Source: Laetmonice hystrix
Lineage: Eukaryota
Direction of reading: 5' to 3'
DNA length: 64,000 nt
NCBI GenBank assembly: GCA_965235115.1
Contig: OZ249437.1
Location: 34,596,001-34,660,000, forward strand
The translations under genes and the position numbers were made by a program. This document shows, one piece after another, positions 1,247 to 64,000 of the stretch (positions within the stretch are counted from its first letter, which is position 1; every line of letters starts with the position of its first letter). The notes below the pieces were generated by a model that ran no database searches, was not told the origin of the DNA, and saw only the letters and a list, made by a program, of their open reading frames with translations.

Positions 1247-2289
1247 CTCCTTCGCAAAGAATAATTATCTCGGACAAAATGATATTGTTTTCATCGGTCT
1301 CCACACCTTCACCTACAAATGTATTGAACAGGCAGGTCAACGGGGTGATAAATGATAAAGAACAAAGATTCACTTTGCAAAAGATACCACACAATGCTTT
1401 TATCAGAAAGGCCTACAAATGTTACAAGTGTTTCTTGTCCTTGGGAAAACTTACTCATGTCGACTTCCATGACCACTCCAATGTAGGACAACCCGCAGTA
1501 TTTTCGTTTCGACTGCGTTGCCCCGACGTCTGGAATCCGGATCTGACCACTCAAGTCGTGGTAGCCGGTGCGGATTGGTATTATCGGGTGCGTATACGGA
1601 ACCTGCAATAAACGGAAATTACGTGGATTACTTAAAGGGTGTATCCTTCTTCTGCAATGTCAGAATTCCAGGTTCTTTACGAAAATGACAGGTTATGTTT
1701 GTTATTTAAAAAATGCTACATGTAAATCGACGATTTCCACTATAAGATCAAAACATTTTAGTCTACCAGTTCATCTTCTTGGGGATTGATGACGTCATCG
1801 GTGGAGAGATACATTTGCATTCCATATCCACTAATGGTACCGGGTTCAGAGACGTTGGTATATATCCTGAGACTAACACTTGCACAGGAACCAGAATTCA
1901 CTGGGCTTTCCACATCCAGATAGACAGCCTCCAGGTCAACAGCGCCTATAGGATTATATGAATAAACGTTAAAATTATATCAGTGATTTTTCGACAACAG
2001 AAACCTTACAGCTCTGCTCATTTCGTTGCATCGAAAATTATGCATAAAAGTGCAATTTAGGCCCCTACTTTCGTTATATGGCACATTGCCAGATACTGTG
2101 TATAGTTTCGCTGCTCTAGAAACGAACGGCATACATGTCTATCCTGTCCATACAGCCAGTATCACTATGAGGTAGGTATAATATTACTACGAACATAAAA
2201 AGCTGACTTGATGTACCTGTAAGTCCGAACATACTGCATGCGATATATATAATAATGCACGCCCTGCAGGCATGGTGAGACCAATCCAT
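1247..2289 (-). CDS. 5' part of a paralogous CARDB-like-repeat secreted protein gene, divergently transcribed; probably continues leftwards
   Basis: Exons (minus) 2289-2217 (MDWSHHACRACIIIYIACSMFGLT, signal peptide), 1945-1767 (AVDLEAVYLDVESPVNSG...MQMYLSTDDVINPQEDEL), 1602-1455 (VPYTHP...YCGLSYIGVVMEVDM), 1312-1247 (SEGVETDENNIILSEIIILCEG). Canonical GT/AG sites, junction phases 1, 0, 1 and 1. Confidence 0.85.
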
Positions 2290-3539
2290 CTGAATCCAAA
2301 CATGACACGTTGTTTAATTATTTAATTTGAGCCCAACGTTTTATACCCTTTTAATTATCAGAACAAGACTAATCATGTAACGGGGCCAGAGAAGGCTGTT
2401 GTGGGTTTAAGTTACCCTCTACAAAGTCTAACTACCCATAAACATTATGAAATCTTCACTTACCTTCCGCATTATCCCGGAAGACTGTCAAGAAAACGTC
2501 AACATAAGTTGCAATGCCTCACGAAGTAATCAAATATAACGATAAGTGTATAGTTATTATTCCAGTAAAACCTCTTTACGTATACTTGTAACATGAGAGT
2601 GCTGAATCAGCTGTAGCGAGTTACAAGTGGACATACAGCATTCAACAAGTCGGAATGAGGCAGGCAGCGCCACGCTCTGCTGCGCATGCCTATTGACTTC
2701 TTAATGTGTGTCCACTGACTGAATTATAATAATTGATGCCTTAGCTTGGGCTGTCAATTTTTGATGACACTGACGGGCACATACTACAGGCCTACACCAG
2801 GCTTCTGTGGTACACAAGTACCACGTAATTTATTTTTTGGTGAACATTGCATATGTTTCCAGGCTAAGATATTGTATTTTGTTGACATGATTTAAGCCAC
2901 CAGTCTCCTTTATACCTGTTTTCAGTAGATTAGTCTAATATAACAAAGAAGGATATAAAATCTATTAGGGTCTTCTTTCCTCCGAACAAAGTGAAGACTG
3001 TTTCAGATTAAATTTAGTTACTACTAATAGTAAGTTATTGTTAAGTATGGACTTCATATTGTTTACACTGACATACGTAATGTCAACAGGCACTTGTCAA
3101 CTATCTTTCCAGTGTTCTCCGAAGGCATACATACTTCAGGATGTTTTGCGAGTATGCGTTTGTAAAATATTCAAGGGGTGTGGATATGGCGTTGGCCGGT
3201 CCTGACAATGACTACCCTGTCAAGTGAAGCCTGACATGACAGGGCTGAGCACTGAACAACATATACCTCATGCAGGGACCACCGCTGTTTTCTTCTTTTC
3301 TTCTTTTTTTGAGTGTTGAGTAAGAATAGTAGGCCTACTTTTGTTCAGGCCTAGTCGTATAAACCCCCTTAAATTTTAACAAGGAGATCCTGAAAGTTGT
3401 GTGATAAATTAAGCATAGCTAATTCGATCTCCCATCTCTCTTCCACTAATGATGAGCCTGTCATGTATATTCTTTAAGCTTGAGGAGTTTAACTGTATAC
3501 CCATAGGTACAGTTTGACAGAGTAACTTAATAATGCACC

Positions 3540-3790
3540 ACTTCCAGATCGGCCCCAGCTCTTCACCTGCATCGTCTATTGAGTATGTCCAGTGAAGCAG
3601 GACGCAGCGATGTGCGTCACGGTTGGCCGTCTTCGTTTCCTGACGACGCGACAGAACGCGGAGCTGACAACCGATGACGTTTTGATATGACCAACACCTC
3701 GTGTCCAAGGATGACTTGAGAGAGGAGCGTACGCTCAACGTCCCGGTTTAACGGAACGTCGCAATATCGGGTAGGTGCAACCAACGACAA
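3540..3790. promoter_or_regulatory. Candidate bidirectional promoter / non-coding first exons of both genes
   Basis: GC/CpG-richer island between the two ATGs. It has a minus-strand donor (GCAG|gtgaag, exon end 3567) and a plus-strand donor (TCGG|gtaggt, exon end 3770). Both ATG exons begin at or within 5 nt of an acceptor AG, implying upstream UTR exons. Confidence 0.4.
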
Positions 3791-4014
3791 TGAATGTGGA
3801 ATGCGTTTGATGTTTGTATCTGGTAAAACAACGGCAAGACAACCATTGGCAATACTTTGGTTAAAACAGTAGTCTCTACAGTTCACTTAGCCGAATGTTA
3901 TGGAGTATTAATTATGTAAATTTATCTAGAACCATCTTTACTTTTTTTTCTCAGTCGTCGCCTCGGCCATGCGCCTCTCTCTAGCGCCTGAAAAGTAAAC
4001 CTTGTTCCAGAAAT

Positions 4015-4111
4015 ATGGCGGCAATAGGCCTATATCCTGTTGCCAGACCTTCATATGTTTATGTCGCGGTGCTGATCGCCACAATATTGGTCCTATGTGA
4101 CGCCATACCAG
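4015..4111 (+). CDS. First coding exon: signal peptide [32 protein letters not shown]
   Basis: ATG 4015 just after the acceptor cttgttccag (4010); hydrophobic core [14 protein letters not shown]; phase-1 donor G|gtgggt fits the phase-1 exon at 4496. Confidence 0.8.
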
Positions 4112-7100
4112 GTGGGTACTAGATTCACTTTTGTCCTATTAAAGCACCTTTTACTCAACTATGACGATTTTAATGCTGAGGCAAGGCAATGTCAGCGCAG
4201 GGGTGATATCGTTGTCACAAGGCAACGGACAGCAGGAGCTACTCATCCCACACGACATTGTTTGACCATAGACCATTTTCAATATAGATCTAGATTTAAG
4301 AGAACCTATGTCTTTCAACCTGTTAATATACGTCCAATTAGTAAAAGTAGGCAAAGCATTTATAATTGACGTAGGCCTATAGTTAGTGTGGCATTCACAG
4401 CAATCGTGGATAAGGCTAGAATCACATTACATTTGAAAAATTGACCTATATCATTCAAATTTAGAACCTGACACCTTAAATTTATTCGTTTTCAGATATC
4501 ACGATCACTGATTTCCGGAAAGATCTATCGTCTATACAGATCTTTCCAGAGAGAGTGGCCCGTATGCATTTTACTTTAAACTTTCAAAACACTGGTGACG
4601 ACATACCGCCAGCTTCCGGTAACAATGACAACTATGACGTCAGAGTGGCTCTGACGGACACAAACATATGTTCCGCTACCGCTATGGCCGCTACGGTCGA
4701 GGAATATTTCCCAACTTATTTCCCACAGGTCGACGAAGCTAGAAAGCTGGAGTCAGGTATAGGTTACACATATTAAGGCTGATATTATTGTCTCTATACT
4801 TAGATATCGAAGGAGAAGGCTCTTTGATAATCATCCTTTTGAAAACAAGAAACTAATTTTGAATCATTACATTCATTTTGGGATACTAATTAACACAAGA
4901 AGCGTCTCATATGTCATCTTGCTCTTTGTGAACGGTAATACAGCTTTAATGAAGAGGCCTCGGGTTAATTGTCGACATGATAGGATCTTTGATTTTGATA
5001 TATTTTTGTTGGTATCCTAGGTTTTGCTGGAGGCAGCACACTTACCATCGTGGGGAAGAGCCAGTTTCGCCTTCCCGCTGACAGATGTACAGTTGGGTTG
5101 AAGCTCAACTTATGTTTACAAGTGATTGAGGCACCTGGCGCCTCCTACAATCTTAGTGGATCTTTGTCAAATTGCCTGTGCCATGTAGGCCCACCCATAG
5201 ATTGCTCTGGTCGTAAGTTACTTTGCACATTTTGTTTTGAATGCAGTTTCTTGACTTGACTCCTGATGGACTCGCTTTCTTTTCGTTAGCTTTACTTGTG
5301 CGATTCTTTCCCCCTTTTCAAAAATCCTGGCTCTGCCCCTATGCAAACATTATTAATTCCCCATTTGACATTTGACACATCATCATTATAATGCCACAGT
5401 GGTGCATCCATCGGGAGCGTTGCAACCCCCCCCCCCCCCGCAACTAGTTTTTCTTTTTCCCCCTTTCAACGTCCTGCATTGACCCTGCTTAACCTCTTCA
5501 CCCCCACTCCTGTGCCTACCATTTTCAGAGAGCAGAGATCTCAGCATCACCGAGTTCAACACTCGGGGAGGTGTGTGGCGTACTGACCGGCCGAACGCTG
5601 TCCGACTGACCGTTCGGGTCCGACTCGATGGTGGCGCCCTCTTCCAACCCAGGCTTGTCGCCACCGATGACTTCTCCGTCAAACTGTGGTTGTCACTCGA
5701 TGAGATCTACAACCCAGAGGATACGCACGTATGTTTATATTGCATATACCGGAGCGCGATTTTCCTCAAATGTATGGTAGTCACAATTCAATGTTAACAT
5801 TGGCCCGACACGAGTTACTGTTTCAGGTTTGTTCTTTCAATGAGTGGAACCATGTCGACTTTAATACCACGAATAGCATTGATCTCAGCGTCATAGATCT
5901 GGAATTACAACTCCGAGATTATCGATATTGCGGACCTGCCTATCTTATTGCGCAAGTTCTTCCTGCTAATGGTGGGTGAAAGTATGAGAACTAAGCCATT
6001 GAACACAGCCAAGTTCATCATTGATTAACTTGCCAATGCGTATAATTCCTTAGTGTATAGCTAAATAGAGCTAGATTTGATCAAACACGTTTAACGTTAT
6101 TTCCGTTGCTTGAATTCCTCCTGATAACATCAGGTAGACCTACTTTATCTGTAGCCTATGTCAGTACAAGATGTGGGTGTCTGAAGATGTTTTTCGTTGA
6201 AATCAATATTGCCATATAGTTACCCTTAAATTTCTTATATAGCTTGAAAATTTAACGAACGGACAATATAGCAACAAGCCCCATTGTTCACTGAACGTTA
6301 AGGGGAGAACTAAGCATATTTTCGTTTTACTGACATGCTTTTCCTACAGAGTCTGAGTTTAACGAGTACGACAAGTGGAATAACATGGCTGTTACTTCGG
6401 TAAAGGTCTTCTGTCGCCATTCAGGTATTTGAAAGCATTATCAGTTTAACATTCGCCGGTTGTTTGAGCGGAACAGAAGTTTTCGAAAGATACGTATTAT
6501 CATTATGCAATGCAAGATTAGCAGGGGATGTTAGAATGTCAACAATAACCTCCACAAAAGCTGAACATCATTTGGCCGGTGAAACTCTCCGTCTCTGTTT
6601 TCAGAATCAGTAGTGCCTCAGGTTGATTGGGTGTTGACCGACGCTTCGTTAGCGGTGAACTGTGGCGAGGAGCTCTACAGCGGCGTCAAGTACACATTGA
6701 CATTGAAGGCCAAGGTTCTTAGACTGGCCGATACCTGCAAGCCGTGTGGACGTGCCTACTTTACCATTGACATCGACTCTACTCACGTTGCAGTGCAAGA
6801 TTTAACAGGTGCTGTCTTATTAGGCCAGACTTAACGGATTGTTCGTTTCGCGGCTGCATCAAATTTTCTTGGAACAAAATAAGACTCCTAACCACAAGTG
6901 CCAGCTAATCCAACCAAAGGTTTAGATTCTAATCCCAGCCAACCAAAATACCTTCCATTGAATGACAGTTGTTTCTCTGTGTATTACCAAAGTGCACAGT
7001 GTGTCGTGGTCGGATGTCGCCAAGTCTCCCTTGGCCCCTGTCTGTGGTGGAGGAGTGATGGACATCCAAGTGGACATTACAGTGTCAATAACGGTTAACA

Positions 7101-10100
7101 CCGTAACCATGGCCGACCTTAACGTTGCCATTAGCAACCTTGACGCCGCCAGCGGGGAAATGGAGGAAATTCTCAGTAACAACAACGCCCTTTTCCCTGT
7201 GACGCTATCACCGCAAACCTCAGGCAAGTATCCAGCCACTTTCAGAAAGAACTGAGATGAGGGTTCGATGTGTAATAGATTGGGATAGTCTCTGTTAGGT
7301 TGTTTAAGTCTCTGTACAGCGTAACCAGGATTGATGTAAGAGAGATGTCCAAACAGTGCATATTTATGTAAGTGATGCAACATATTGATGTATTGATGCA
7401 GCACATTTATCTAAGTAATGCAGCATATTTATGTAAGTGATGCAACCAATCATCAGATTGTAGATCACACTCCCATGCTATCATGTTATTGCCAGGGCAG
7501 GAGGAGGATTCCGGTCAACAATTAAAAAAACTGTCTACACCCCTGGTAAAATGTTACTACATGTAGCTGAAAATGCCTCTATGAAAATCCCCCGTACATT
7601 CTGTTACAGTTGTAGATGTAGCGGTTGTCTCACTCACTGTCAATGACACCCAAGGGTACCCAGCCTATGTTATAGCAGATGGGTTGACCCTGGTATCTTT
7701 AGACATCTCTGCTGTGTTTGAACTGGACACTCAGACATATGCTGACCTCACGGTAGGGCTTTATTTATCCCACGACAGCGTATACAACCAGAATGATGAT
7801 ACCGACACAGGTAAGGAATCTTTGTGATTGGGTAAAGATATCGAGTTTGATAGGGCCCACATGTATGTAGACAGACCAAAAACTACCGTTCCATTGCCGA
7901 CGAGAAAACATATTGGACGAGCTTGCGGAGCGAAATTGGATCAAGACGTTTTTAAGAAAGTTTAAAGGAGAAATGTAGAGAGCCATATGGGATTAGGCAT
8001 AGGCCTACTGCATATTTGACATAATTATAATGCAAGAAGCGTTTTGCTATTTTTTTTTGCTCGATCTCAGTCAATGATTTGTACCATGGTAACTATAATT
8101 GCGGTAAAAACCTCTTTTAAAATTTCATACGGGACTTTCGCATGTTGACTGATGTCTGAAGGACCGAAACTTTACGATTTAACACATTTTGATTCAATGT
8201 CCCGTTTTCAGGTTTACCTGTAACTTTGAGTTCATTTGGTGACGTATCGGTGACGGTACAAGCTGTCAATCGACCGCTAGATGTCACTCTATGTGGACGA
8301 GTCTACCTGATCCTCGTCATAACGCCAAGTCAGCCAGACTACCGGCCCTGTAACAACTGGATGGCTGAACCGGTCGTCGTCCCCTGTCACCCCTCAGGTT
8401 GGCGACAAATACGGAATCAATTTGCACGAGTTTTCGTTCGTTAAAATTTCTACTGAAAATAGATGGGACGCTTAACGAACGGAAAGTCATGCAATCAGTT
8501 TCATTGTAACCTTGAGTATAACCTTGTCGTGTGTCCTTGATATCCTCACCCCCTCTGACACGCATCCTTGTATCTCTAGGAAATGAGGGAGGGCACCATG
8601 GCCTATCTCACTGTTAAAGAAGAGCGTTTCCCCATAGATTCAGCGATAATCGTCCCAAAGCCAAAGAAACAAGAACAAAAACTTACCTAACTTTCTTAAC
8701 TTAAGACCTTCTGGAGATGCGTCGGTTCGTTGTGTTACGACCTGCACCGCTGCTGTTTTACGCCAACATGACGTATGACGTTACGTTGGAGACTGACGTG
8801 TCCTGTGTCGAGAGAAATTGTTCCGACCTGAGCTGTTTCGAGATATCCTTTGTGTTCGACCTGGACCGCTACTATAACGGAAATGAAATATTGATAGAGA
8901 GCAAGTCTTTCCAGACATCAATCGACGATATAAGGTAAGCCCTGCCTGATTTTGCAACATTTTGAAATATTATGCCTCAGTCATACATATTTCTAGCTTC
9001 TTACCCATTTGATGTTAGCACATTGCATATTTTCGGGTTCCCTACCTGTCGATACGTAGATTAGTGTCTATATGTTTTCTCCATATAGGGAATCCCTAAT
9101 GACGTTTAATATAACCGTATACAACTTAACCCTGGGAGAATGCAATCCCAGACATCGCTACCTTGGGTTGGTAGTTACCGACTGCTATTCTCTGTGGAAT
9201 GAATCTTACATGGTCAACAATTACAAAACGTTGTTTTTGTCTTGGGAGTGTTCAACCGGTTAGTCCCAACTTTATTATATTATTTTAAAGACACCCTTGA
9301 CGTTTGTCCATAATCCCAGTATCGGTTAATTATCTCAATTTCTTGCTTACTAGGTCTACCTGTTTCAGAAAGCGATATGTTGATGAATGTTCCGGGAATG
9401 GCGCCTGTCAGTGACCCCATGGCCCCAGTGGTCCTGAACTCACCGGATGGGGTCAGTCTGACGTTGGACGGCCTCCCGTTGTGCAAGTCTGATACCCCAC
9501 ACTTTGATGTTGGTGTCTATCTAACCGACGACTCAAACTGTCAACCCCCTTACGGCCATTGGCTTCAGTCTCGGCGCCTTCCCTTTGAGTGCGACCAACT
9601 GCAACTCGCAGGTCGGTGAAATACTAGTCTATGATGGTGCACGAATATGGTTGAGTCTATACCACCAAACATTAGGAAAGGGTAACTTATTGCGGAATGT
9701 AAACAAATTCAAAGCTTAAAGCATTGATTACGTTTGTAAACATTCACCATACAACGAGGGATGACTCCTTTTTTCAAGTTTAGAATCACAATCGCACCAA
9801 ATACTACGATGGTAGTACGATTGTGTTGTTTATAGTTTGTTGACTTAGTAGATGAACATAATAGTAGCTTATACTAACCTGTTTTTTAAACATTATTAAT
9901 TTATAAAATATTCCATGATATCTCTCAGTTGAAGTGACAGCCGCAGACTACGGCAGGTACCCGGGACAGTCGGTTATGTTTGGAGTGGTGTTTGACCCTT
10001 GGGGAAGGTTAAAGGACCCGGATTGGGAGGATAATTGTGCCATCTGGACCGCGCCCTTCCTATCCCCCGCCCAGGCTTGCCCCTGTACACCCCAGTGTAA

Positions 10101-13100
10101 GTCAAAGAACTCTCCCTCCATTCGGTTTTCTGTCTTCTACTTTGTTTGATTACCATGTACAGGCATACAATGTTAAATGTGCGCTGTGATTGTGTTCTGA
10201 CGGTTTTAGTGATGTCGGAGTTCGTTGATAGGCCAGTTCTCAGCAAGACGATTTACATAAACTCGGACTATTCATTTGATGTGAAGGTAGATAAAATCAT
10301 TGTTCTAAGGTGTGCCACATGCCATCTAGCCTGATGCTTTGATAGGTAGTTGGGGGTTGGGGTCAGGACTTGAGCGTTCTGAACACTAGCAGACTAAAGT
10401 TTTAATAACTATTTTGTGGGGGAATATTAGGTGCAAGGCATGATAGAAATAAAAGACCTCTCCTCAAAGCCAGATGAAATCAATTAATTGCTGTTAAAAG
10501 TCAAAAGCACCGATTAGAGGGGATGCGTCCCCCTTGAATTTCCATGTTAACTTATTATGCCTCAGTCAACAGATCATTTTTTATGCCATGTTACATAATT
10601 TGTTTCTTTTAATGTTATAAAGTAAGGTGTGAGGGGGTCTTTAAAATAACCCCAATGACATCACTTATGGACTGCCACAAATCGTGATTGATAATGCTGA
10701 CACATCAACCTATATAATACCTCCTCCTGCCGCCAGGTGAAGGTGACGAACTTGGACTGCCATGAGACAGCGGCTTGCACGCCCTCTGGTGCCGTGTTTG
10801 ATCTCAACGTGACGTTGTCTGCCGATAACAGCACGCTGGGTGGGAGTGACCTGGAGGTGGAGGCCGGCCCGGCGGGCGGTGGCGGGTTCGGGCCGCTGGC
10901 GCCGGGGGCGTCCGTTTTGATCCCGCTGACAGGTCTGTCTGGCATTACAACGTCTAGGAGAGAGTCAGACAACAGACAAAGTCATTATTCGACTGAATGA
11001 TAGGTCTAGCCCTACGAAAGGACATTAGGACGTGTAGACTCTATAAATACAGATCTATCAGGGCCTACTTCATAACAGCCGAGTTTGCTTGATTGGAACG
11101 GTTTCAGAAAAATTGTTCCGAAATACAGTTACAAGTGGCAAAATCTTAACTTCTACTGGGAAGTTGTTCTTAGTTATTCACGGAAGGTAATTTTCCGTTC
11201 ATGCATGGGAAATTCTATTAAATGGTTAGGCCCTAAAGTTAATTTTGGTCGGGGGGGGGAGCTGATCTCCGAAATAGGTTTTATAATGACATTAAATATT
11301 ATCCAATATGAAATGGCCTAGGCCCGCTTTATTAATTTCTTATTTCGTTTTCAGTGCGTCTGAGAGACATGACTCCGGCGGAGTGTGAATTATTGGTTGA
11401 GGGTGATCCAGTCCTGATTGTAGACGTGGTTTCTATATGTCCTTCCCTCAACTTTACATCCTATGGACCCAATGTGGCGCGCGCTGATCTTAAATGTGGA
11501 ACATTCTGTAAATATTTACAGTCATAAATTGACAAATGTTTCAGCTTTATTCATGACCATCTCCAAATGTAAAGATTGTCATTACCCGGGAAAAGCCGGT
11601 TTCTGCAAATTGTTAATTAATGAAGAAAGAGAGATTTGCTACTTTTTTTTTGGCTCTGAAAGGGGAAAAGAACAGGTTAGGTTGATTTGAGATGAGAAGG
11701 ATATATCTTAAAGAGTGAAGTTAATATGCCTCCAACGACTGTGCATAATGTTTTTCATCATCTTAAACTGATTACGTGCCGAAATCTATATATAAATCTG
11801 GTTCAATATGACACAACAATCGGTTTTAATCGATAACAACCAGAATTTGAAACTCTGACAGTTATTTGTGATTTATAATGTAACATATTTTGGTTACAGT
11901 GAAACCTATAGTAACCAGCTTCAGCAGTCCTGAACCAGTTCTATTCCGGGGATTCACTTATGAAGACCTACAGCTTGTCTTCGATGTGATCAATGAGGTA
12001 TAGATCTATACTTGTATGTATGTGTTGTGGTATACATGTATAGACCAAACTGGACACTGTGCAGCAGGAATAGAAACTCCAGTTTTCTTTATCTAAACTT
12101 CAAATAATTAATGTAAGACTCAATGGATATAAATACATACAGTAATACGTCCTGTTCAGATTACTTTACAATGTGTTTATTATGATGTACTGTTTTACAT
12201 TAATTACGGGATTACTTTACAATGTGTTTATTATGATGTACTGTTTTACATAAATTACGGATTACTTTACAATGTGTTTATTATGATGTACTGTTTTACA
12301 ATAATTACGGGATTACTTTACAATGTGTTTATTATGATGTACTGTTTTACATTAATTACGGGATTACTTTACAATGTGTTTATTGTGATGTACTGTTTTA
12401 CAATAATTACGGGATTACTTTACAATGTGTTTATTATGATGTACTGTTTTACAATAATTACGGGATTACTTTACAATGTGTTTATTATGATGTACTGTTT
12501 TACAATAATTACGGGATTACTTTACAATGTGTTTATTATGATGTACTGTTTTACATTAATTACGGGATTACTTTACAATGTGTTTATTGTGATGTACTGT
12601 TTTACATTAATTACGGGATTATTTTACAATGTGTTTACTATGATGTAGCGGGCCTACTATTTTACAATAATTACGGATTACTTTACAATATGGATATTAT
12701 GATGCACTGTTTTACAATAATTCTTATGTGCAGTCGCCTACTGATGTCGTCCAGTCCCGTGTTGGTGAGCCCAACTTCGCGTTCTCGATCGAATTCGTCG
12801 ATGGCACGGGAGGGCGCGTGCAGTGGACTATTGTAGACTGGGACACAACTCTGGCGTGGCAAGCTATACCTTTCTTCGGGCGTGTAACTATCACCGTTAA
12901 AGGTACGCTCTCCCTGCAATAAATTAATACTAAAATATTATCTTTCAGGATGCCCGCAATCCTCGAGAAGTATTTGGATTCAATTGTCATAGGCACCGGA
13001 TCCGGGGGAGGCGTAAGCCCCCAATTCATAAGCTGGGTAGGCTTGCCTCCCCCCAGCTTGGACATTGGATTTGCCCCCCCCCCCTCCCCGGGAGGTCTCG

Positions 13101-16100
13101 GATCCCCCACTCTAAGTATCTTCCGGCGTCTATGACACTGCCCAGTACTCAGAGATGAGACTTCCCCCTGTTTGTGTGCTGCCAGTCAGTGTTTTTCTCT
13201 CCCAAACAAGGTTCATCTAGGTTTATAGTGTCTTTCAAAATGCATGCATGAAATTCCACTAGGTAAGGATTAAGATTTCTGTGAGAAACGTAAGAACATT
13301 ATACACTTACTGGGGTCATGTATCTCACTGATAATGTCCCACTGTTGGCAGGGTCGGTGCTGCCGTCCGTCCTGGACTGCACGGGTCTGGGCCCGGTGGT
13401 GGCGATCGTTGTGTGTATCTCACTGATAATGTCCCACTGTTGGCAGGGTCGGTGCTGCCGTCCGTCCTGGACTGCACGGATCTGGGCCCGGTGGTGGCGA
13501 TCGTTGTGTGTATCTCACTGATAATGTCCCACTGTTGGCAGGGTCTGTGCTGCCGTCCGTCCTCGACTGCACGGGTCTGGGCCCGGTGGTGGCGATCGTT
13601 GTGAACGTGTGTATCTCACTGATAATGTCCCACTGTTGGCAGGGTCTGTGCTGCCGTCCGTCCTCGACTGTCCAGGTCTGGGCCCGGTGGTGGCGATCGT
13701 TGTTTGTATCTCACTGATAATGTCCCACTGTTGGCAGGGTCTGTGCTGCCGTCCGTCCTCGACTGCACGGGTCTGGGCCCGGTGGTGGCGATCGTTGTGT
13801 GTATCTCACTGATAATGTCCCACTGTTGGCAGGGTCTGTGCTGCCGTCCGTCCTCGACTGCACGGGTCTGGGCCCGGTGGTGGCGATCGTTGTGTGTATC
13901 TCACTGATAATGTCCCACTGTTGGCAGGGTCTGTGCTGCCGTCCGTCCTCGACTGCACGGGTCTGGGCCCGGTGGTGGGGATCGTTGTGTGTATCTCACT
14001 GATAATGTCCCACTGTTGGCAGGGTCTGTGCTGCCGTCCGTCCTGGACTGTCCGGGTCTGGGCCCGGTGGTGGCGATCGTTGTGTGTATCTCACTGATAA
14101 TGTCCCACTGTTGGCAGGGTCTGTGCTGCCGTCCGTCCTCGACTGTCCAGGTCTGGGCCCGGTGGTGGCGATCGTTGTTTGTATCTCACTGATAATGTCC
14201 CACTGTTGGCAGGGTCTGTGCTGCCGTCCGTCCTGGACTGCACGGGTCTGGGCCCGGTGGTGGCGATCGTTGTGTGTATCTCACTGATAATGTCCCACTG
14301 TTGGCAGGGTCTGTGCTGCCGTCCGTCCTCGACTGCACGGGTCTGGGCCCGGTGGTGGCGATCGTTGTGAAAGTGGTCCCAGACACTGTGCGCTTGGCCC
14401 AGACATACGGTTACATGACAGCTGACGTCCTCTATTATCAGAACGATACCACGGTCCGGTGTGACGCCCGTAAGTTTGCCGCGCCACTTTGATCATGTTT
14501 TTTCTACTTGTATACATACGTAAGCCTACGTTTTCGTATATTATACGTATACATAATAGAGTTGAAGGAGAGGAATCTGGATATCAGGGGCTTTGAGCTG
14601 GGTCAAGTTAGAAAGTTGTATCAGGGGAGAAATTGGTTGCAAACGGCGGGGTGCCGCCCCAACCTTTTGGAACTGCCAATGCAGTGTTGTAGAAAAAAAG
14701 GGCCAGTGACTTGCTTTGCTTGTTCTGCTATGGAATCAATGAAATATCTAGGCCGACATACTGTAGGCTACATAAAGACTACAATATTAGGACTGCCACA
14801 TTCAGCCTGAAAATCTCCAAAGTAATTGATTTTGTTCCTTACTGTACCATACTATTAGACGGTTCTTGTTCCTTTCATTAACAACACAGATGGAATAGAC
14901 ATCAGCGTCACCGACTTTTACTTACGAGAGAGGCCGGAAAGCGTGAACAGGTATAACTGTATGACCCGTGATGAGCCCACCTCCTACACACTCGAGTTAC
15001 AGATCACCCAAGGTGATGGCTCTGACGCCTTCCTCGACCAGGTTCAAAATTTCGACTACGCTTTCTGTCTCTCCATCGGGCCCAACGTCGACCTGCAGAA
15101 CGACTGTGTCATTCAAAAAACCTGTAGGTATTCTCTTTCTGATCTCAAAGTTTACATTAGGGTATGTATACTACACTGGCGCATCCAGGATTTCACTAAA
15201 GGGGGGGGGGGCACAGGAAAATAATTCATTGTTTGCATTACTAAAGCTTTTTTGTTGTATGTAGGACAAGTTACAACCATGTGCTTCATCATGTTCATGT
15301 TGTTATGTGTTTAATCTAAATACGATAAAATTATTTTAAAATGAGTATATAAATGAGCACGTGCCGCCATCCTCCCCCCGATTGTGAATGAGAATGACAT
15401 ATTCCAGGTGATCAAGGGTTAATACTTCTATGTTCACAATAACTTTTAGCTTTGAGATTTCTCGATCCGGTTTTTCAAAATGTAAGATCTTCCTGAAGCT
15501 TGAGCTGAACACGTCCGATTGTATGGTTTGCTAAGAGCAGCCAATCAGAAGCATTGAGATTGAAGATAAGCCAGAACGTACATTTTGAAAAACCAGATCC
15601 TTGTTGTTTTTCAGTTCTTGACCCTACAACTCAAAACGACACGTTCTACAGTGTACTTACCGATCAGAGCACTACGATAAGGCCAAATGGAGACAACCTT
15701 CTCGTGAGAGATGACCAATGGTGCGGGGGCTTCTATTTAACGGTTGTTGTTTTTAGGACAGCCGGCTGGCCAAGCTCGGGATATAGCTGTAAGGAACCTT
15801 TGTATCGAAACCATAGTCTTACAGGCTGATATTGTGTTTGCGAGGCGACAGGATAATTGGGTAAAACTTTAATGTGCAAATGGGACTCGAGATCATATTC
15901 GTATGATAATAAAGAAAATGCCATTGTAACTGAATAGGTCAACCAGTGTGAAATTAGAAAGCTTACAAAAAGGGTAATGAGTTAGGGAGGTAATGGTTGT
16001 TGTACGCCCAGTGAGTGGATTGATGGTTGTTGTACGCCCAGTGAGTGAATTGATGGTTGTTGTACGCCCAGTGAGTGAATTGATGGTTGTTGTACGCCCA

Positions 16101-19100
16101 GTGAGTGAATTGATGGTTGTTGTACGCCCAGTGAGTGAATTGATGGTTGTTGTACGCCCAGTGAGTGGATTGATGGTTGTTGTACGCCCAGTGAGTGAAT
16201 TGATGGTTGTTGTACACCCAGTGAGTGAATTGATGGTTGTTGTACGTCCGGTGAGTGAATTGATGGTTGTTGTACGCCCAGTGAGTGAATTGATGGTTGT
16301 TGTACGCCCAGTGAGTGAATTGATGGTTGTTGTACGCCCAGTGAGTGAATTGATGGTTGTTGTGCGCCAAGTGAGTGAATTGATGGTTGTTGTACGCCCA
16401 GTGAGTGAATTGATGGTTGTTGTGCGCCCAGTGAGTGAATTGATGGTTGTTGTGCGCCCAGTGAGTGAATTGATGGTTTTTGTACGCCCAGTGAGTGAAT
16501 TGACGGTTGTTGTGCGCCCAGTGAGTGAATTGATGGTTGTTGTGCGCCCAGTGAGTGAATTGATGGTTTTTGTACGCCCAGTGAGTGAATTGATGGTTGT
16601 TGTACGCCCAGTGAGTGAATTGATGGTTGTTGTACGCCCTGTCGATAGTATATGAACAATCATCAAGGTAAATGAAGCAGCTATCAGTGTTTTCACAGTG
16701 AGTGAAGCCAATCCTGATGATCCAAGGATAGCCAACAACTTCCACACCATCATGGTTTCTATGTACTGCGATCACGGTTAGTAACTCACTTCTACCGTCA
16801 CCCGTAAGGGACATAGATTTTTTTCACTTTCCAAGATTTTCATACTAAGATCAATTTTGTTTTGTTTTAATTTTTAAGTCTAACGGACTGTTCGGTTTTT
16901 CAAAACTTATCATTCTTGCTTAGATCAACCAGTCAGAAAAGTTTTGAGACATGTTAAAGGTTTTGAAGAATCGGGCCAATGTACTTATGCTACGCAAGCA
17001 TTGCTCTTGGTCTACTTTTGTAATTCCCCCAATTCTATATACTACTCACAGCCACATTGTCACTTGACTTCACTACATTGAATGAACTTTTCCATTACTT
17101 TCAGACATGTTTGTTTTGAATAGCATCAGTAGTACCATGTTAAGGACATTCGATGGTACAACTGCTAACGTAACTTTTAATGCGACTGTGACGAATAGTT
17201 TCATAAATCTCAATTGTATGGGTCAAGATATACCGCCGTCACCAAGAGGAGATCCAAACTTTGAGTTCTTCGTAAGTTACTAATAATAGCTTCTTTGAGA
17301 AGAACCGCAGTGAATGTCTAAGAACTATATTGAAGTAAAATTATGTAATCGTCAAACTGCAAGGAGTAGAAGTCCTAGAATTATTTTTCAGAGATATAAA
17401 GTGAAGGGGTATAAAGAAAGAGCATTGTGGTAAAGAAATTCGCACCATTAGAATTTTTGCTATCGAAATGATAACTTAACGTATGATGTGGATGACGTGT
17501 TAACAGTTCAATAACAGTGTCGGAGAAGTCTGTGTCGAGAAGTTCACGTTCAGTGACGCTGACCAAGCAGCTATGGCCGGTTGGTTTAATTATAACGTTA
17601 CTTCTCGTATCGTCGTCACAAACGTTGAAGCAGTGCTGTGTACCCCGGTCGATGGTCCCACGTTAACCAGGTAAATATACGACTACATTTCAATATGTGA
17701 CATTGTCAGTGCCATATCATGAACGCGACACAATAACATTCACACACTGGCTTTCCTAGCAATATGATCACCAACCATCTAAGTTTGTGATCAATTATCA
17801 GTGGTATATTCAGATTAGTGTATGTTGTATTGAATAGTTGGCACGTAGCAGTACGGAGGGGTGTTGGAGCCCCAGCAAGTTATGTAGACCGGTATATTAA
17901 CAACAACTACCGTGTTATCTCCGGATTTGTAGGTGAGTGAACATGCTCCGTGGGCGTCCGCCCTGTTACGTCATGGCCCCTCCCTTTGTTTTTCCTCCAA
18001 AGTTGTGTTCTTGCTTAAGCTTACCTTGAAGTTTAAGTCATCTGATTGGCTGGTCTAAGGTAATTAGGCACTAAACTAAAGAATTACATTAAAACCGTTT
18101 TATTGTACCAGTTAAATCAGATCGTTATAATTTTTTTTTAACTGGCGGCTCAAGTGGGGGCACGCCCCCCCCCCCCCCCCCCCAATCCTGAAGATGGTGG
18201 GTGGAACAGACTGATTGTATAAAATAGTTTATATCGCATGAGTGACAGTTGTAATAATATCTTACCGTATATTTGTGTAGATGCTGTGAATCACGAAGTG
18301 GCAAGTGTGTCGGTTATCGAACCTGCGTTTCTGGCAAACATTGTCGTCAATCTAACATTGAGGGTAAGACATAACTACAATCTAACATTGAGGGTAAGAC
18401 ATAACTACAATCTAACATTGAGGGTAAGACATAACTACAATCTAACATTGAGGGTAAGACATAACTCCAAACACGAACTCAATGACCATTTTTTCAGGAA
18501 TAAACGCCCAGTTCATTTCAAAGCTCATGTAGGCTAAGAGGGAATAGATCAAGTTTTAATATAAATTGTTATATTATAAAATCTTTTGTATAGAGAAGAT
18601 GTTCGCAACGTCTCCCCTGTAAACCTATACACTTTGGAGTCGATAAATGTCGGCGTATGCTTCCTTACTTACTAACTTACTTTACTAATTGACATACTTT
18701 CTTACTTACATACTTGCTTTCCCGCAGTATCCGGATCTGTACGCCTTCTCCATAAGTGATCTTGTGGTGAAGATATTCTGGTCATCTGACTCTATATATG
18801 ACGACGATGATACGGAGGGGGTCCAACAGTCCATCGCCGCCGAATCTCCAGTGGTCACCGGGTGGCTGGTTGACCACAGCTTCCTCATCACACTGGTCAG
18901 TCGAAAACAGGGCCCTAAACAGCAGTCATTTCATGTCTATAATGTATTTTTTGGAATCTGAACCCCCCCCCCCCGTACGACCCTGTAACTACATTGGCTT
19001 TCATGATAATACTACCTACTTCAGACAGCTACGAACGAAAGGACCCTCTGTGGCTATCGCCATGTCATTGCTACGATTGAAATGAGTTCCTCGGCGACTG

Positions 19101-22100
19101 GCAAAATCGATCTGAATTCGGATGATAATATCGGCTTGGCATCTTTCTTTGTCAATTGTCCAACGGGTACGTAGTCGTTGATACTGACAAAATCTTTAAA
19201 CTGCCCGAAGTAGCCTACTGTCTTTATACTCTTAGGGTTGTTTCTGAGGGTTTATAATATCACGTCGTATACTTTCTCACTGAGAGTGGATTCTTTTTAA
19301 ATCATTATTTCTTTTGGCACCACAGAATTTCCAAATGACCTCTACACCATGGCGGGAACGCTGAGGGTCAGATCTTCCGTTCACCCGGATGTAATTTCTC
19401 TGGTGACGTTGTCAGATGTCGTCGTCAGATATATGTCAGCTCTCGCCAACCGCGAGTTTGATCTCAAGGTATTTCATGAGTTCGCATGTAATTTTGAGAA
19501 ACCCTCAAGTTGCCTTCACCAAACTCCTAAAATGTAGAACCTGCATGGCAGCAATTACCGATACAAGACGTGAAAACGAGATCGACCTTCAGTTGTATGT
19601 GTGTGTGTGTTTTAGATGTATGTTCAAAATGGTGGCCCGTGTGGGAACCCGTTATCCATTGACGTCACACCATCCCATTGGCATTTCGGAGAAAAAGGCC
19701 AAAACATGGATACAGTCACAATTGATAAGGTAAAAATTGTATGAATTTCGTACCGAGTCACAAAGCAGAACTAATAGAACTACGATAGGATCGCACGAGT
19801 GAAGCATAGCGCATAATAAGAAAATGTAGATGTTTATAAATACACAACCCCCCCCCCCCCTAAAAAACAAAAAAACTGGAATTCATAGTCAACCATGTTT
19901 ATAAAAATGTATCACTCTCTTTGACTGGTGGGTTTAATTAAGGTATAATTGTTATATCTCTCCTGGTAGGTCGTTGGCTCCCTTGTCATTCCGAGGGCAG
20001 CATGTGCGGTAGGTATTAACGTTCTCTGTGTCGGAGTGAGAGGCCATCCTGCAGATATCACCTCCAGGATGGAGCATCCTATCAGTAACAATTTCATCTC
20101 GGTCCCCATCAGGTGTGCTGGCAACGGTGAGGTTTATTTAACTGTGGTAAAAGTTCATCATTTCTCTTCAGTTATCTTGTGTATTCAATAGTTTAGATTG
20201 GACATGTGTCTTCACAATCCCAGTTTAACGTGGTATATTTGTTCGTGTTTGTGTTTAAACAGATGAAATAGACCTGTCGTGTGCTACATCTTCTACCGGC
20301 GATGTGCATGTGCAACTTGAAGTTGAAGGCCTTATACCTAAGCCTACGCTGACGGTTGACTATATAAAAACCTCGGGCCTACGTCTGGAGGTGGACGTTA
20401 CATTGACAGGTTCGGAAACAATACCTTTGATTAAGTAGGTCGATAGGCCGTGGCAGAGAAATTACGTTGAAATACCGTGACGTCCTAAAAACGGTAGCGT
20501 CTTCGGTCCCCTTAAAGTAGATAAGGTATCAAATCACACTTGCGCTGATTATTGCTCTGCCATTTTAAATTTCCCGACCGTGTCAGGATACAGCTCTGGT
20601 TGGGACAAGCAGCCTGATACCGCACCAGCCATGTTCAACATCCGACTCGAGATTGTCTGCCACGACGGCAGTCAGAGGAGGGAAATCCCATATGACGTAG
20701 ACCGCCACGTCATCAATGACGTCACGCGAACCTCCAAAACACTCCGCTTAGGTAAGTCCCCTCTCCCTCCCTCCTTCCGGGTGCTGCCGACGTAATGATA
20801 ACTAAACAGTTACCAATGTGACATCAATGTAAACTTTACCACTCTTGAGGAAATGATTTACACGCATTCCACATTTTCTTAGATTGTGAGAGTTTTCCCA
20901 AAGGACAGACTGAATCTTTCACATTTCGACTGTAAAAGAAGAGAAAGACACAGAGAAAGAGAGACAGCGGGGAGAGAAAATGAAACTTACAGTCTGTATT
21001 TTTTCCATGTTTTATATTTTCCTGTTGTCTGTCAACCATGTCACGTAGGTGGAAGGCTTCGTTTGCCCCCAGAAGATTTTTTAGACTTGGTTGGGACCGA
21101 TTGCCAATTTGAGGCAATACTCGATTCCGAAAATCAGATCCAAGAAATGGATGAGACAAACAACCGATGCACCCTCAATGGGGTGACCGTCACCACTTTA
21201 CTGCTGGAAGGTAGGCCAGGAACATCGAGAAATTCATTCCCATCTGGCATCACCAAATTAAACTTCTAGATTAAACTAATCCTAAACACTAAAAATAAGG
21301 CCACCTCGCGTGATCTTGATGCTTCTCGCAAAAATAGTCCGACCTACTGTAACATGACAGTAAGGTGAAAGATTTTACACCAGTAATTTTTACCGGAAAT
21401 GTTAAGGGTGTGTAATTACACCAGTAATTTTTACTGTGTTTTGGAGGTGTCCTCATCAATTCTATATCGAGTTATTTCCCTTCCAGGGATCGATCTGATA
21501 GCCGAGTCGGTGGACGTGACCAGTGCGTCTATGGCCCACGCGATCGTCGCGAGCGACAGTGTCAATAGCTACCTGGTCACATTTACCGTCAAGTACAGCG
21601 TTTTCAAGAACCCGGCCTCGGACGCGATTTACGAGTTTACCTACCGAATCTTCGCCGAGAGTTTGAACGGAACACGGTTTAATGTGACCGAAGAGCCAGT
21701 GGTGGCTAACACGTCCGTCAACTGCGCGGAGTGTAAGCAGCATGAAATTCAACAAAATGTTGTTGAAGTTTATTATGCACCTTTCTTGTTGTACATGTAT
21801 TTAGCACATGCTGGCGTAGCTAGACGTTCCATTATGCCATGATAAAAGTTACATTATTAAAGCATAATGCATTGTTTCGAGTAACAGCCGTGGTTTTAAA
21901 TGAATGCGGCATAACGGTGCGAAATCTTAACGGTAAATGTCGTCTATGCCCTCGGCTACGCTTCGGGCATATGTTACGCCATTACACCGCCTCGAAGGCG
22001 CGCTATATGAAATCCATTAAAAACAGCTTCCTCTGAAAAATCACCAACAGAAATGACGCTGATGTCAGTATAATTAGGTGCTTTAGGATGATCCGTTTAA

Positions 22101-62887: not shown

Positions 62888-62959
62888 GTATGTCACAGTC
62901 AATGCAGATTCCTTTATTTAGCCTTTATTTCCCTCAGTTTGACATGTAGGCCTATTATA

Positions 62960-63647
62960 TAGTAAACTCCGCCTAAGTCGACACTTTTGGGACCAGCGTT
63001 TTTGTGTCGGCTTAGAGAAATGACGAGATACACATAAGTCGTCATTATGTCGATTTTTGCATAAGATGACATATGGACGGCATGTGTGTATGCCGATACA
63101 CTGTAGCCTACACCGTCAGCACAAATTATGATAACACTGACGGCTATAGGGCATCTCCAGTTAAATATACATGTATACACGTAGCTGCAATGTATATCAT
63201 GCTACTCAAAGAAATTCAATCAAACCAAGAGAAACAAAAAAATCTACAATAGGTAGCAGGAGGTCACATTTGTGACGTTCCGAGGCTCATAATCTACTAG
63301 CACCTTCTCGCCATGATTAGAACACGGTGAGAAACAGATGCCCGCTTCAAAGGTTCATTTTCCAGTACTACTCACTGGGCGGCCAGGCTTACGTTACAGC
63401 TCGCCCGTGTCGACTTAGAGGTAAACATTTATATGTATAAACGTTATACTTGGGGCCAGACTCGGTGTGTCGGCTTAGGCCAAGTGCCGACTGACAAGTG
63501 TCGGCTTTGACGATGTATTCTACATAGAATTAACATTAGACCAAATCGTGATTTTAGGAATTGCGTCGACTTAGTTTGTCGGCTTACACGCTGGCGACTT
63601 AGGTGATTTGTCGGCTTACACCTTGGCGACTTAGGCGGAGTTTACTA
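62960..63647. mobile_element. ~690-bp MITE, Tc1/pogo-like termini
   Basis: TIR TAGTAAACTCCGCCTAAGTCG / CGACTTAGGCGGAGTTTACTA; internal repeats of GTCGGCTTA / GTCGACTTAG; left flank TA, right flank CA. Confidence 0.75.
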
Positions 63648-63778
63648 CATATTAAATGTCTATATGAAAGCATTGTCAGATTTTTGGAACCAGTGCGTCA
63701 ACTTGGCTCTTACCATATGTTTCAAAGCGGAAAGAGACTTATAGTTTTCTCTTTCACTGCTGTTCACTCCTAATATAG

Positions 63779-63855
63779 GAGCATCAGGCACGTTAAAACA
63801 GTTGCTGTTTAGCCATCAATGCCCAGAACACACCTTTGATTGGAAGGAGACATAA
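63779..63855 (+). CDS. Possible next or terminal coding exon (ASGTLKQLLFSHQCPEHTFDWKET*)
   Basis: Acceptor taatatag|GA in the required phase 1, stop TAA at 63853-63855. An alternative acceptor gtttag|CC gives an open phase 1-1 exon ending at the downstream cccc|gtaagt donor. Ambiguous. Confidence 0.3.
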
Positions 63856-64000
63856 AAATGTTACTAAAAGTTGTTGCTTTCCCCGTAAGTACTTCTGTTG
63901 TAATTAACACTTTAAAGGTCTTTTATTATATCTGATGCGATTTCCTTCCAACTGCCCTTGAATATTCCTATATCAAAATCAGAAAGTGACCATTTAGCTT

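What the first reader, a model, noticed from the sequence alone, without database searches (positions are those of the whole stretch)
1247..4111. Head-to-head paralogue pair sharing a ~1.7 kb control region
Seen: a minus-strand gene (ATG 2289) has its own signal peptide and a first repeat AVDLEAVYL...MYLSTDDVI...CGLSYIGVV...ETDENN. This closely parallels repeat 17 of the + gene (LVDLEAVRL...MYLSKDDVL...EVDETNN). It has the same three-exon layout (179/148/66 nt versus 194/163/72 nt) and the same phases. Both ATG exons follow an acceptor AG, and outward-facing donors sit at 3567 (-) and 3770 (+) in one CpG-richer island. Inference: an inverted duplication produced a co-regulated pair on a bidirectional promoter, reminiscent of collagen IV pairs; the products may co-assemble.
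Basis: partly seen in the sequence, partly recalled or inferred. Interest (0 to 1): 0.75.

Follow-up and report, generated by a model that had tools for sequence, protein, structure and literature searches.

The report
Head-to-head pair of giant paralogues
Two ~70-kb genes, each for a ~6,500-residue membrane protein built from about thirty CARDB-like beta-sandwich repeats plus EGF, TSP1, NIDO and VWD modules, lie head to head with 1.7 kb between their start codons; the pair is real, complete and old, but no RNA data exist to test whether they share one promoter.

Summary
The minus-strand exons (ATG exon 2289-2217, then 179/148/66 nt, phases 1/0/1/1) are exactly as described. So are the 194/163/72-nt repeat of the + gene, the AGs before both ATG exons, the GT donors at 3567(-) and 3770(+), and a CpG-rich patch at 3.55-3.85 kb.

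The minus gene runs about 70 kb leftwards, beyond the window. It mirrors the + gene domain for domain: signal peptide, about 30 CARDB-like repeats, EGF, TSP1, EGF, NIDO, VWD, about 20 EGF, TSP1, and a TM helix with a 3-4-residue tail. My models give about 6,503 and 6,510 aa. They align collinearly at 24-28% identity.

The duplication is old. The + gene is closer to proteins of other species (39% to one; the annelid Owenia scores higher than the neighbour), and an AU test rejects the two as sisters (p=0.0007). The link to "repeat 17" is family resemblance; + repeat 2 matches about as well and is the collinear partner.

The shared bidirectional promoter is untested, because no RNA runs were found. 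The + side looks good. On the minus side a stronger donor at 2464, with an in-frame ATG, suggests a separate start. Co-assembly has no evidence. One amphioxus relative is not paired.

The parts
2217..2289 (-). Minus gene, exon carrying ATG 2289 (73 nt, ends in phase 1). It encodes the signal-peptide-like MDWSHHACRACIIIYIACSMFGLTG. An AG at 2291-2290 abuts the ATG.
   Evidence: Read directly. Acceptor score 8.8 bits. An out-of-frame ATG at 2303 argues that the exon is entered by splicing.
1767..1945 (-). Minus gene, repeat 1, exon A (179 nt, phase 1 to 0): AVDLEAVYL...MYLSTDDVINPQEDEL
   Evidence: AG and GT flanks and open frame. Profile hit E 4e-16 (this exon was among the profile's seed sequences).
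1455..1602 (-). Minus gene, repeat 1, exon B (148 nt, phase 0 to 1): VPYTHP...YCGLSYIGVVMEVDM
1247..1312 (-). Minus gene, repeat 1, exon C (66 nt, phase 1 to 1): EGVETDENNIILSEIIILCEG. This is the CARDB-type C-terminal motif. The gene continues leftwards out of the window to about -67.86 kb (G000:C2:34,528,139).
2290..4014 (.). Stretch of 1,725 bp between the two start codons. It is single-copy in the genome.
   Evidence: Only a self-match in the whole genome. Contigs of three DNA runs span 2193-4198 or 2193-3973.
3550..3850 (.). CpG-rich patch (observed/expected 1.2-1.56, GC up to 56%) flanked on the left by CpG-poor DNA. It is the likely promoter of the + gene and the candidate shared promoter.
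3650..3770 (+). Putative non-coding first exon of the + gene. The start is unknown. It would end at 3770 with donor CGG|GTAGGT.
   Evidence: Donor 8.2 bits, near the top of all + strand GTs in 2300-4010 and the best inside the CpG patch. No transcript evidence.
3955..4111 (+). Plus gene ATG exon. Acceptor at 3955 (11.3 bits) or at 4011 (7.5 bits). ATG at 4015. Signal peptide [33 protein letters not shown]. Ends in phase 1.
3568..3640 (-). Its start is unknown. A direct join to 2289 keeps an in-frame ATG (MQ-MDW...).
   Evidence: Donor 5.6 bits, below the 95th percentile of all GTs. No transcript evidence.
2464..2484 (-). Rival 5' element of the minus gene. It is a 21-nt exon or the end of a first exon, with acceptor 7.6 bits and donor CGGAAG|GTAAGTG at 12.3 bits. 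Its ATG at 2473 is in frame and gives MRK-MDWSHH...
5529..6424 (+). Plus gene repeat 2 (exons 5529-5728, 5827-5971, 6350-6424; 200/145/75 nt, phases 1/0/1/1). It is the collinear partner of minus repeat 1.
24984..26022 (+).
37896..39086 (+). Plus gene, 1,191-nt exon holding about 2.7 repeats without introns. The matching part of the minus gene is split over about eight exons.
   Evidence: AlphaFold model pLDDT 82, tandem beta-sandwiches.
4015..64000 (+). Plus gene body within the window: repeats to about 42 kb, then EGF, TSP1, EGF, NIDO (54210-54310), VWD (57432-57665) and further EGFs. It continues to a TM exon and a stop at about 72.42 kb, beyond the window.

Best explanation
An ancient inverted duplication of a whole giant gene left two intact paralogues transcribed away from each other. 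Together they span about 140 kb (G000:C2:34,528,139-34,668,421).

Each encodes a type-I membrane protein of about 6,500 residues. The order of parts is: signal peptide; about 30 CARDB-like beta-sandwich repeats (profile-recognised: at least 22 in + and 20 in -); EGF; TSP1; EGF; NIDO; VWD; about 20 EGF; TSP1; one TM helix; and a 3-4-residue cytoplasmic tail. This is a MUC4/Mesh-like stalk in which a rigid beta-sandwich array replaces the mucin repeats, so the products are most likely cell-surface or apical-matrix adhesion or barrier proteins.

The repeat array and its three-exon unit (phases 1-0-1) existed before the duplication. That is why minus repeat 1 resembles several + repeats.

Shown here: the exons, the mirrored architecture, the collinearity, the age, and that the junction between the genes is real. 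Inferred: the function. Also inferred: the + gene starts in the CpG patch at 3.55-3.85 kb (non-coding exon ending at 3770, spliced to 3955). Whether the minus gene also starts there, making a true bidirectional promoter, I put at about 0.4. The confidence below is for the core claim, a real, complete, ancient head-to-head paralogue pair.
For: The minus-strand exons have canonical splice sites and consistent phases.

Minus-strand repeat-end motifs (ExDExNN) run from +1.3 kb to -36.6 kb. They are followed by EGF, TSP1, EGF, NIDO, VWD and EGF exons in the same order as the + gene, at 35-53% identity per exon. Pfam NIDO hits lie on both genes. Both genes have a TM helix followed by a stop.

My exon-chaining models give 6,510 aa (+) and 6,503 aa (-). 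They align on the main diagonal from residue about 2,400 to the end, with E values down to 3e-87.

Four results bear on the repeat fold. A relative, P0003, scores 89 bits on Pfam CARDB. The window's own exons score 21.9 bits against a cut-off of 22.7. The nearest clusters in the ESM Atlas are CARDB proteins. The AlphaFold model (pLDDT 82) shows tandem beta-sandwiches.

Evidence of age is as follows. The 396-aa + exon scores 280 bits against P0001, 100 against Owenia and 85 against the minus neighbour. In the tree, + groups with P0001 and P0005 (98/95). The AU test rejects + and - as sisters at p=0.0007. Owenia P0011 chains to 579 bits on + against 419 on -. The intron-free triple-repeat exon occurs in + and, by ORF length, in + type relatives, but not in -.

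The junction is real: contigs of three DNA runs cross 2193-4198, and the spacer is single-copy. A relative of the family is assembled as a 23.7-kb contig with nearly continuous ORFs, which I read as transcript-like, so genes of this kind appear to be expressed.
Against: There is no transcript evidence for either gene in this organism.

My exon models come from a home-made chainer. They contain errors: small or missed exons, and transposon or satellite ORFs that had to be masked. 'Intact' therefore means no break was seen, not that every exon is verified.

In the N-terminal 2,400 residues the paralogues align only faintly.

The grouping of the minus gene with P0003 may be long-branch attraction. 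Over full length P0003 is nearer to - in the repeat array but nearer to + in the C-terminal part.

AMOP was not detected. The pairing was not seen at the one amphioxus relative whose 5' end is annotated.
Confidence: 0.82

Rival explanations
1. The pair is real, but the two genes have separate promoters. The + gene starts in the CpG patch at 3.55-3.85 kb. The minus gene starts about 1 kb away, near 2.5-2.7 kb, with a first exon ending at 2464 whose ATG (2473) opens the reading frame as MRK-MDWSHH.... Adjacency would then be a relic of the duplication and not a regulatory unit.
For: The donor at 2464 scores 12.3 bits, the best minus-strand donor in the spacer, against 5.6 for the donor at 3567. 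Its ATG is in frame and adds a basic N-terminus typical of signal peptides. The CpG patch sits 165-465 bp from the + ATG but 1.26-1.56 kb from the minus ATG. An amphioxus relative works without a paired paralogue.
Against: The 21-nt element also has a fair acceptor (7.6 bits), so it could be an internal micro-exon fed from 3567. All three possible joins stay in frame. CpG observed/expected around 2400-2700 is only the local average of 0.85-1.0. Two paralogues this old staying 1.7 kb apart hints at constraint.
Confidence: 0.45
2. The duplication is recent and lineage-specific, and the minus copy simply evolved very fast, so the long-kept arrangement is an illusion.
For: The minus branch is twice as long as the + branch, 2.25 against 1.15 changes per site. 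A clade holding +, -, P0001, P0005 and P0003 is not rejected (p=0.058).
Against: The AU test rejects + and - as sisters (p=0.0007). + is 39% identical to P0001 but 24% to - over the same exon. The two genes differ in intron content in that region. Owenia is nearer to + than - is.
Confidence: 0.1
3. The minus-strand exons are a short pseudogene fragment or a decaying copy.
For: None beyond the lack of RNA data.
Against: The whole architecture is present in order over 70 kb, with open exons, a TM helix and a stop at the matching place, and about the same total length as the + gene.
Confidence: 0.04
4. The inverted pair is an assembly artefact, such as a mis-joined haplotig or a false inversion.
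For: None.
Against: The copies are only 24-28% identical in protein. Contigs from three DNA runs cross the junction at 2193-4198 without loose ends there, although these runs are from one sample that may be the source of the assembly.
Confidence: 0.02

Closest known systems
Collagen IV head-to-head gene pairs (COL4A1/COL4A2 type); comparison from general knowledge
   Same: Two paralogues from an inverted duplication, transcribed divergently from a short spacer. Both are large modular extracellular proteins. The arrangement has been retained long after the duplication.
   Different: Here no shared promoter, co-expression or heteromer has been shown. The protein family is unrelated. Conservation of the pairing in other species could not be shown, and one amphioxus relative is unpaired.
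MUC4, and the related Mesh/SUSD2 group (NIDO-AMOP-VWD membrane proteins; PMC5354666, PMC4671926)
   Same: Type-I membrane protein with NIDO, then VWD, then EGF modules, one TM helix and a short tail, carrying a very long N-terminal repeat region.
   Different: The N-terminal region is about 30 folded CARDB-like beta-sandwiches, not O-glycosylated mucin repeats. AMOP is not detectable by Pfam. There are many more EGF modules and two TSP1 repeats.
Uncharacterised proteins of Branchiostoma (XP_078689460.1, KAI8495792.1, XP_078671850.1) and Owenia fusiformis (CAH1772454.1)
   Same: Same family. They have CARDB-like repeat arrays followed, in the same or the next gene model, by EGF, TSP1, NIDO and VWD.
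   Different: Identity is 21-28%. The gene models are split or partial. No head-to-head paralogue lies at the amphioxus locus whose 5' end is annotated.
Bacterial and archaeal CARDB-domain proteins (Pfam PF07705)
   Same: A repeat of about 100-140 residues with a beta-sandwich fold and the C-terminal E-x-(D/N)-E-x-N-N motif.
   Different: This is an animal gene with phase-1 introns. The repeats carry conserved cysteines and are fused to metazoan matrix modules and a TM anchor.

Membership tests
CARDB repeat (Pfam PF07705) | Match to the Pfam model above its gathering score | tested here: inconclusive
   The window's own exons score 21.9, 17.7 and 13.6 bits against a cut-off of 22.7, and cover only the C-terminal third of the model. 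Minus repeat 1 alone gives no hit. The homologue P0003 sums to 89.4 bits, P0011 to 44.3 and P0018 to 35.2.
CARDB repeat (Pfam PF07705) | Ig-like beta-sandwich fold of each unit | tested here: met
   The AlphaFold2 model of the triple-repeat exon has pLDDT 82 and is all-beta. Foldseek returns tandem beta-sandwich proteins: integrin leg domains, transglutaminase C-terminal barrels, complement MG domains and an archaeal S-layer protein. The nearest Atlas clusters are CARDB proteins, score 0.93.
MUC4-like NIDO-AMOP-VWD membrane proteins | NIDO domain | tested here: met
   Plus exon 54210-54308 scores 26.8 bits against a cut-off of 25. The genome scan hits both genes, at C2:34650204 (+) and C2:34552044 (-).
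MUC4-like NIDO-AMOP-VWD membrane proteins | AMOP domain between NIDO and VWD | tested here: not met
   The Pfam AMOP scan of the whole genome finds five places on contig C4 and none at this locus. The exon-by-exon scan of 54574-55446 gives no hit. The continuous ORFs of the relative L024 give none either. Exon-wise scanning is weak, so a divergent AMOP is not excluded.
MUC4-like NIDO-AMOP-VWD membrane proteins | VWD domain | tested here: met
   24.8 bits against a cut-off of 22.9 on 57359-57697, and 22.4 bits on the trimmed exon. The minus gene has a 41%-identical exon at -47304..-47456. The match is marginal and covers only the C-terminal part of the model.
MUC4-like NIDO-AMOP-VWD membrane proteins | Single C-terminal TM helix with a short cytoplasmic tail | tested here: met
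   Read directly...VLILTLAALFGVSGCVLLVACLFCLLRWA* for + and ...WIIAIIVIVCSLLAIIGVCILAICICKKQV* for -. No TM predictor was run.
Bidirectional-promoter gene pair | Divergent orientation with a short spacer | tested here: met
   ATG 2289 (-) and ATG 4015 (+) are 1,725 bp apart.
Bidirectional-promoter gene pair | Transcription start sites less than about 1 kb apart, in one promoter region | not testable with these tools
   No RNA run holds the stretch. The three runs found are DNA. Sequence alone allows either a shared start region (3568-3770) or a separate minus start near 2.5 kb.
Bidirectional-promoter gene pair | Correlated expression of the two genes | not testable with these tools
   No RNA data.
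Collagen-IV-like conserved paralogue pair | Head-to-head arrangement conserved in other species | tested here: inconclusive
   The amphioxus relative P0018/P0027 has a PRMT gene upstream and no minus-strand repeats within 10 kb. It branches outside both window genes. The closer relatives gave no usable flanks.
Collagen-IV-like conserved paralogue pair | Products assemble into one complex | not tested
   No basis for choosing interacting domains. A complex prediction was not justified.

The most novel reading that the evidence does not exclude
The two genes are an obligate, anciently conserved divergent pair, as old as the spiralian radiation or older. They would be driven by one bidirectional CpG promoter at 3.57-3.77 kb, and their giant CARDB-repeat/NIDO/VWD products would work as a heteromeric cell-surface or apical-matrix structure. 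That would make a second, independent collagen-IV-like case of a structural heteromer encoded by a locked head-to-head pair, in a protein family that nobody has characterised.
Probability: 0.12. Interest if true: 0.7.

Novelty: new member of a known kind. Interest (0 to 1): 0.42.

Why it matters
Head-to-head paralogue pairs that stay together long after duplication are rare. They are usually read as co-regulated partners, collagen IV being the textbook case. Here the partners are two of the largest genes one is likely to find in an invertebrate genome. They belong to an unnamed family known only as 'uncharacterized' models in amphioxus and an annelid. In this family a domain otherwise almost confined to bacteria and archaea (CARDB) forms a 30-unit stalk on a MUC4-like membrane anchor. 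The locus gives a concrete place to test whether adjacency reflects shared regulation. It also gives full-length architecture for a family that current annotations split into pieces. Without expression data it remains a well-documented structural observation and not a demonstrated regulatory unit.

Tried and rejected
1. RNA evidence. The run search returned only three runs of one sample. Laid on 1000-6000 they cover exons, introns and spacer evenly with no joints, so they are DNA.

2. Whole-protein homologue search with P0003. It was swamped by EGF words (hemicentin and similar) and gave no family members.

3. Synteny in closer relatives. The contig of P0001 has no DNA on file. The contig of P0004 has DNA, but only the triple-repeat exon is recognisable and the introns hold retroelements, so walking about 35 kb or more upstream in 10-kb hops was judged hopeless. 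Owenia has no gene called upstream to hop from.

4. Fetching the third family locus at C2:51.23 Mb.

5. Pfam on minus repeat 1 alone gave no hit.

6. AMOP was not found by genome scan, by exon scan, or on a relative's continuous ORFs.

7. My first gene models took in a DIRS gag-like ORF (-54.7..-55.6 kb) and satellite ORFs (-65.0..-66.3 kb; 70.4-71.6 kb). These were masked.

8. Pseudogene fragment and assembly artefact were both rejected (see the rival explanations).

9. A special descent of minus repeat 1 from + 'repeat 17' was rejected in favour of collinear whole-gene duplication.

10. No complex prediction was run, because there was no reasoned pair of domains to test.
Full report
WHAT IS IN THE STATED INTERVAL

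On the minus strand an ATG at 2289 opens a 73-nt exon (2289..2217) that encodes a hydrophobic, signal-peptide-like start. An AG sits directly before the ATG, and a GT donor follows the exon. Three further exons follow: 179 nt (1945..1767), 148 nt (1602..1455) and 66 nt (1312..1247). All have AG and GT flanks, and the phases are 1/0/1/1. Joined, they give a 131-residue unit that ends in ETDENN...LCEG.

The + gene starts at ATG 4015 in an exon that ends at 4111, also in phase 1.

CpG observed/expected is 1.56 in 3601-3800. That is the 99th percentile of 200-bp windows over 204 kb. The DNA to its left (2700-3550) is CpG-poor, at 0.2-0.6.

HOW SIMILAR IS MINUS REPEAT 1 TO 'REPEAT 17'?

The similarity is above chance but modest.
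- tblastn finds 36.6% identity over 82 residues, E 3e-4.
- A Smith-Waterman scan along my + protein model gives 67 for that unit, against 41 +/- 5 for shuffled queries.
- It gives 72 for the second repeat of the + gene, exons 5529-5728, 5827-5971 and 6350-6424.
- That second repeat has the same three-exon layout and phases. It also shares the YCG...C cysteines, which 'repeat 17' lacks.

So the three-exon, phase 1-0-1 unit is a general property of the array. The resemblance is family resemblance.

THE MINUS GENE IS COMPLETE

The window is G000:C2:34,596,001-34,660,000. I fetched 140 kb to the left and 40 kb to the right.
- Minus-strand repeat-end motifs continue from +1.3 kb to -36.6 kb.
- Beyond them, tblastn with the + gene's open frames finds minus-strand exons in the same order as in the + gene. 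These are EGF, TSP1, EGF, NIDO, the segment between NIDO and VWD, VWD, and then many EGFs and a second TSP1. Identity is 35-53% per exon.
- A Pfam NIDO scan of the whole genome hits both genes.
- Both genes end with a single hydrophobic helix followed 3-4 codons later by a stop. The + gene ends ...CLFCLLRWA* at about 72.42 kb, and the minus gene ends ...ICICKKQV* at about -67.86 kb.

A simple exon-chaining program trained on the locus gives 112 exons and 6,510 aa for +, and 120 exons and 6,503 aa for -. The two models align on the main diagonal from residue about 2,400 to the end at 24-28% identity, with E values down to 3e-87. There are faint near-diagonal hits further N-terminal.

These models are approximate. 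I had to mask a DIRS-like ORF and satellite ORFs, and some small exons are surely wrong.

WHAT THE PROTEINS ARE

Four results bear on the repeat.
- C-termini of + repeats score just under the Pfam CARDB cut-off (21.9 against 22.7 bits).
- A full-length relative sums to 89 bits.
- The nearest Atlas clusters are CARDB proteins.
- An AlphaFold2 model of the 396-residue triple-repeat exon has pLDDT 82. It is a string of beta-sandwiches that Foldseek matches to integrin leg, transglutaminase barrel and complement MG domains.

A locus-trained profile recognises at least 22 (+) and 20 (-) repeats over arrays long enough for about 30 each. NIDO is above cut-off and VWD is at the cut-off.

The architecture is therefore MUC4/Mesh-like at the membrane end, with a folded CARDB-like stalk in place of mucin repeats. 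A literature search found no paper that combines CARDB with NIDO or AMOP.

Across 1.84 billion representative proteins only 23 match the triple-repeat exon. The named ones are uncharacterised models from Branchiostoma and Owenia. In those genomes the repeats and the EGF/TSP1/NIDO/VWD part lie in adjacent models on the same strand. One relative is assembled as a 23.7-kb contig with nearly continuous ORFs, which I read as transcript-like, so such genes appear to be expressed.

AGE OF THE DUPLICATION

- The + exon scores 280 bits against P0001 (39% identity), 100 against Owenia, and only 85 against the collinear part of its neighbour.
- In a maximum-likelihood tree + groups with P0001 and P0005 (98/95), and - groups with P0003 (98/95).
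- Forcing + and - together costs 41 log-likelihood units (AU p=0.0007).
- Owenia P0011 aligns end to end with + (579 bits against 419 for -).
- The + gene, and by ORF length its relatives in other species, carry the three repeats in one exon. The minus gene splits them over about eight exons.

There are caveats. The minus branch is long. P0003 is nearer to - only in the repeat array. A wider joint clade is not rejected (p=0.058).

My reading is that the duplication clearly predates the split from P0001's organism and probably predates the split from annelids. Earlier notes of this scan call the genome mollusc-like; I did not test that.

THE SPACER AND THE PROMOTER QUESTION

The 1,725-bp spacer is single-copy. 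Contigs of three DNA runs cross it. No RNA run exists.

I scored splice sites with matrices trained on my models. Median true-site scores are 7.3 for donors and 7.6 for acceptors.
- The + side is convincing: donor after 3770 at 8.2 bits inside the CpG patch, and acceptor at 3955 at 11.3 bits.
- A donor after 2464 scores 12.3 bits. It closes a 21-nt element whose ATG is in frame and yields MRK-MDWSHH..., a more canonical signal-peptide start.

The minus gene may therefore start near 2.5-2.7 kb, or it may use 3567 with or without the 21-nt micro-exon. All of these joins stay in frame. Sequence cannot decide between them.

CONSERVATION OF THE PAIRING

The amphioxus relative with an annotated signal-peptide start has an arginine methyltransferase gene as its divergent neighbour. 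It has no minus-strand repeats within 10 kb. However, it branches outside both window genes. Closer relatives gave no usable flanks.

This genome has a third family locus on the same chromosome, at 51.229-51.246 Mb. Only + strand hits were returned there, and I could not fetch it.

VERDICT

The bidirectional promoter and the co-assembly remain hypotheses. I rate the shared promoter at about 0.4.

Noticed in passing
window 43550-48950 (+ gene intron); also about -54.7 to -55.6 kb left of the window (L007:4356-5321, minus strand): A DIRS-type retroelement sits in an intron of the + gene. A related gag-like ORF (shared motifs such as ...LQNALN..WCSNP.K.KKA...) sits in an intron of the minus gene. 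My gene finder first mistook the second one for a 970-nt exon.
   Followed up: partly
about -65.0 to -66.3 kb (L008:3722-4954, minus strand) and about 70.4-71.6 kb right of the window start (L021): Both paralogues carry a kilobase-scale short-period tandem repeat with long open frames in the same intron, between the last TSP1 exon and the TM exon. The two translate to different peptides and match only weakly (27% over 342 aa). This may be coincidence or a repeat-prone site.
   Followed up: partly
window 12100-12900, 13290-14470, 15975-16660, 60930-61310: Four tandem-repeat blocks with long open frames lie inside + gene introns. All four were masked for gene modelling.
   Followed up: no
G000:C2:51,228,724-51,245,618 (+): A third locus with the same CARDB-like repeats lies 16.6 Mb away on the same chromosome. 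Here the triple-repeat region is split by introns. Only + strand hits were returned, and the DNA could not be fetched.
   Followed up: partly
G000:C4:20,688,208-20,691,310 (+) and C4:20,721,792-20,726,582 (-): Two NIDO-AMOP genes with clear Pfam AMOP hits face each other tail to tail about 30 kb apart. This is another inverted paralogue pair of the wider NIDO family, in the opposite configuration.
   Followed up: no
window 4011-4022: The + gene's start codon lies in AAATATGGCGGC, which resembles the YY1 site consensus (AAGATGGCGGC, from memory) often found at start sites.
   Followed up: no
window 1000-6000: Contigs of runs X2 and X3 differ from the reference at about 1% of positions. Among the listed differences, one falls in the 466 nt of minus-gene exons and eight in the 577 nt of its first three introns. 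This hints at constraint on the exons, but 26 further differences were not listed.
   Followed up: no
about -72.56 to -72.92 kb left of the window (minus strand): The next gene beyond the minus paralogue's 3' end starts with an N-terminus like that of patched or sterol-sensing-domain proteins (...YPFIAFITTILLVASLGSG...).
   Followed up: no
about -79.7 to -80.7 kb (left flank) and 85.7-86.4 kb (right flank): Stretches of 71-95% amino-acid identity lie in the same orientation just outside both ends of the gene pair. They are probably copies of one transposable element.
   Followed up: no
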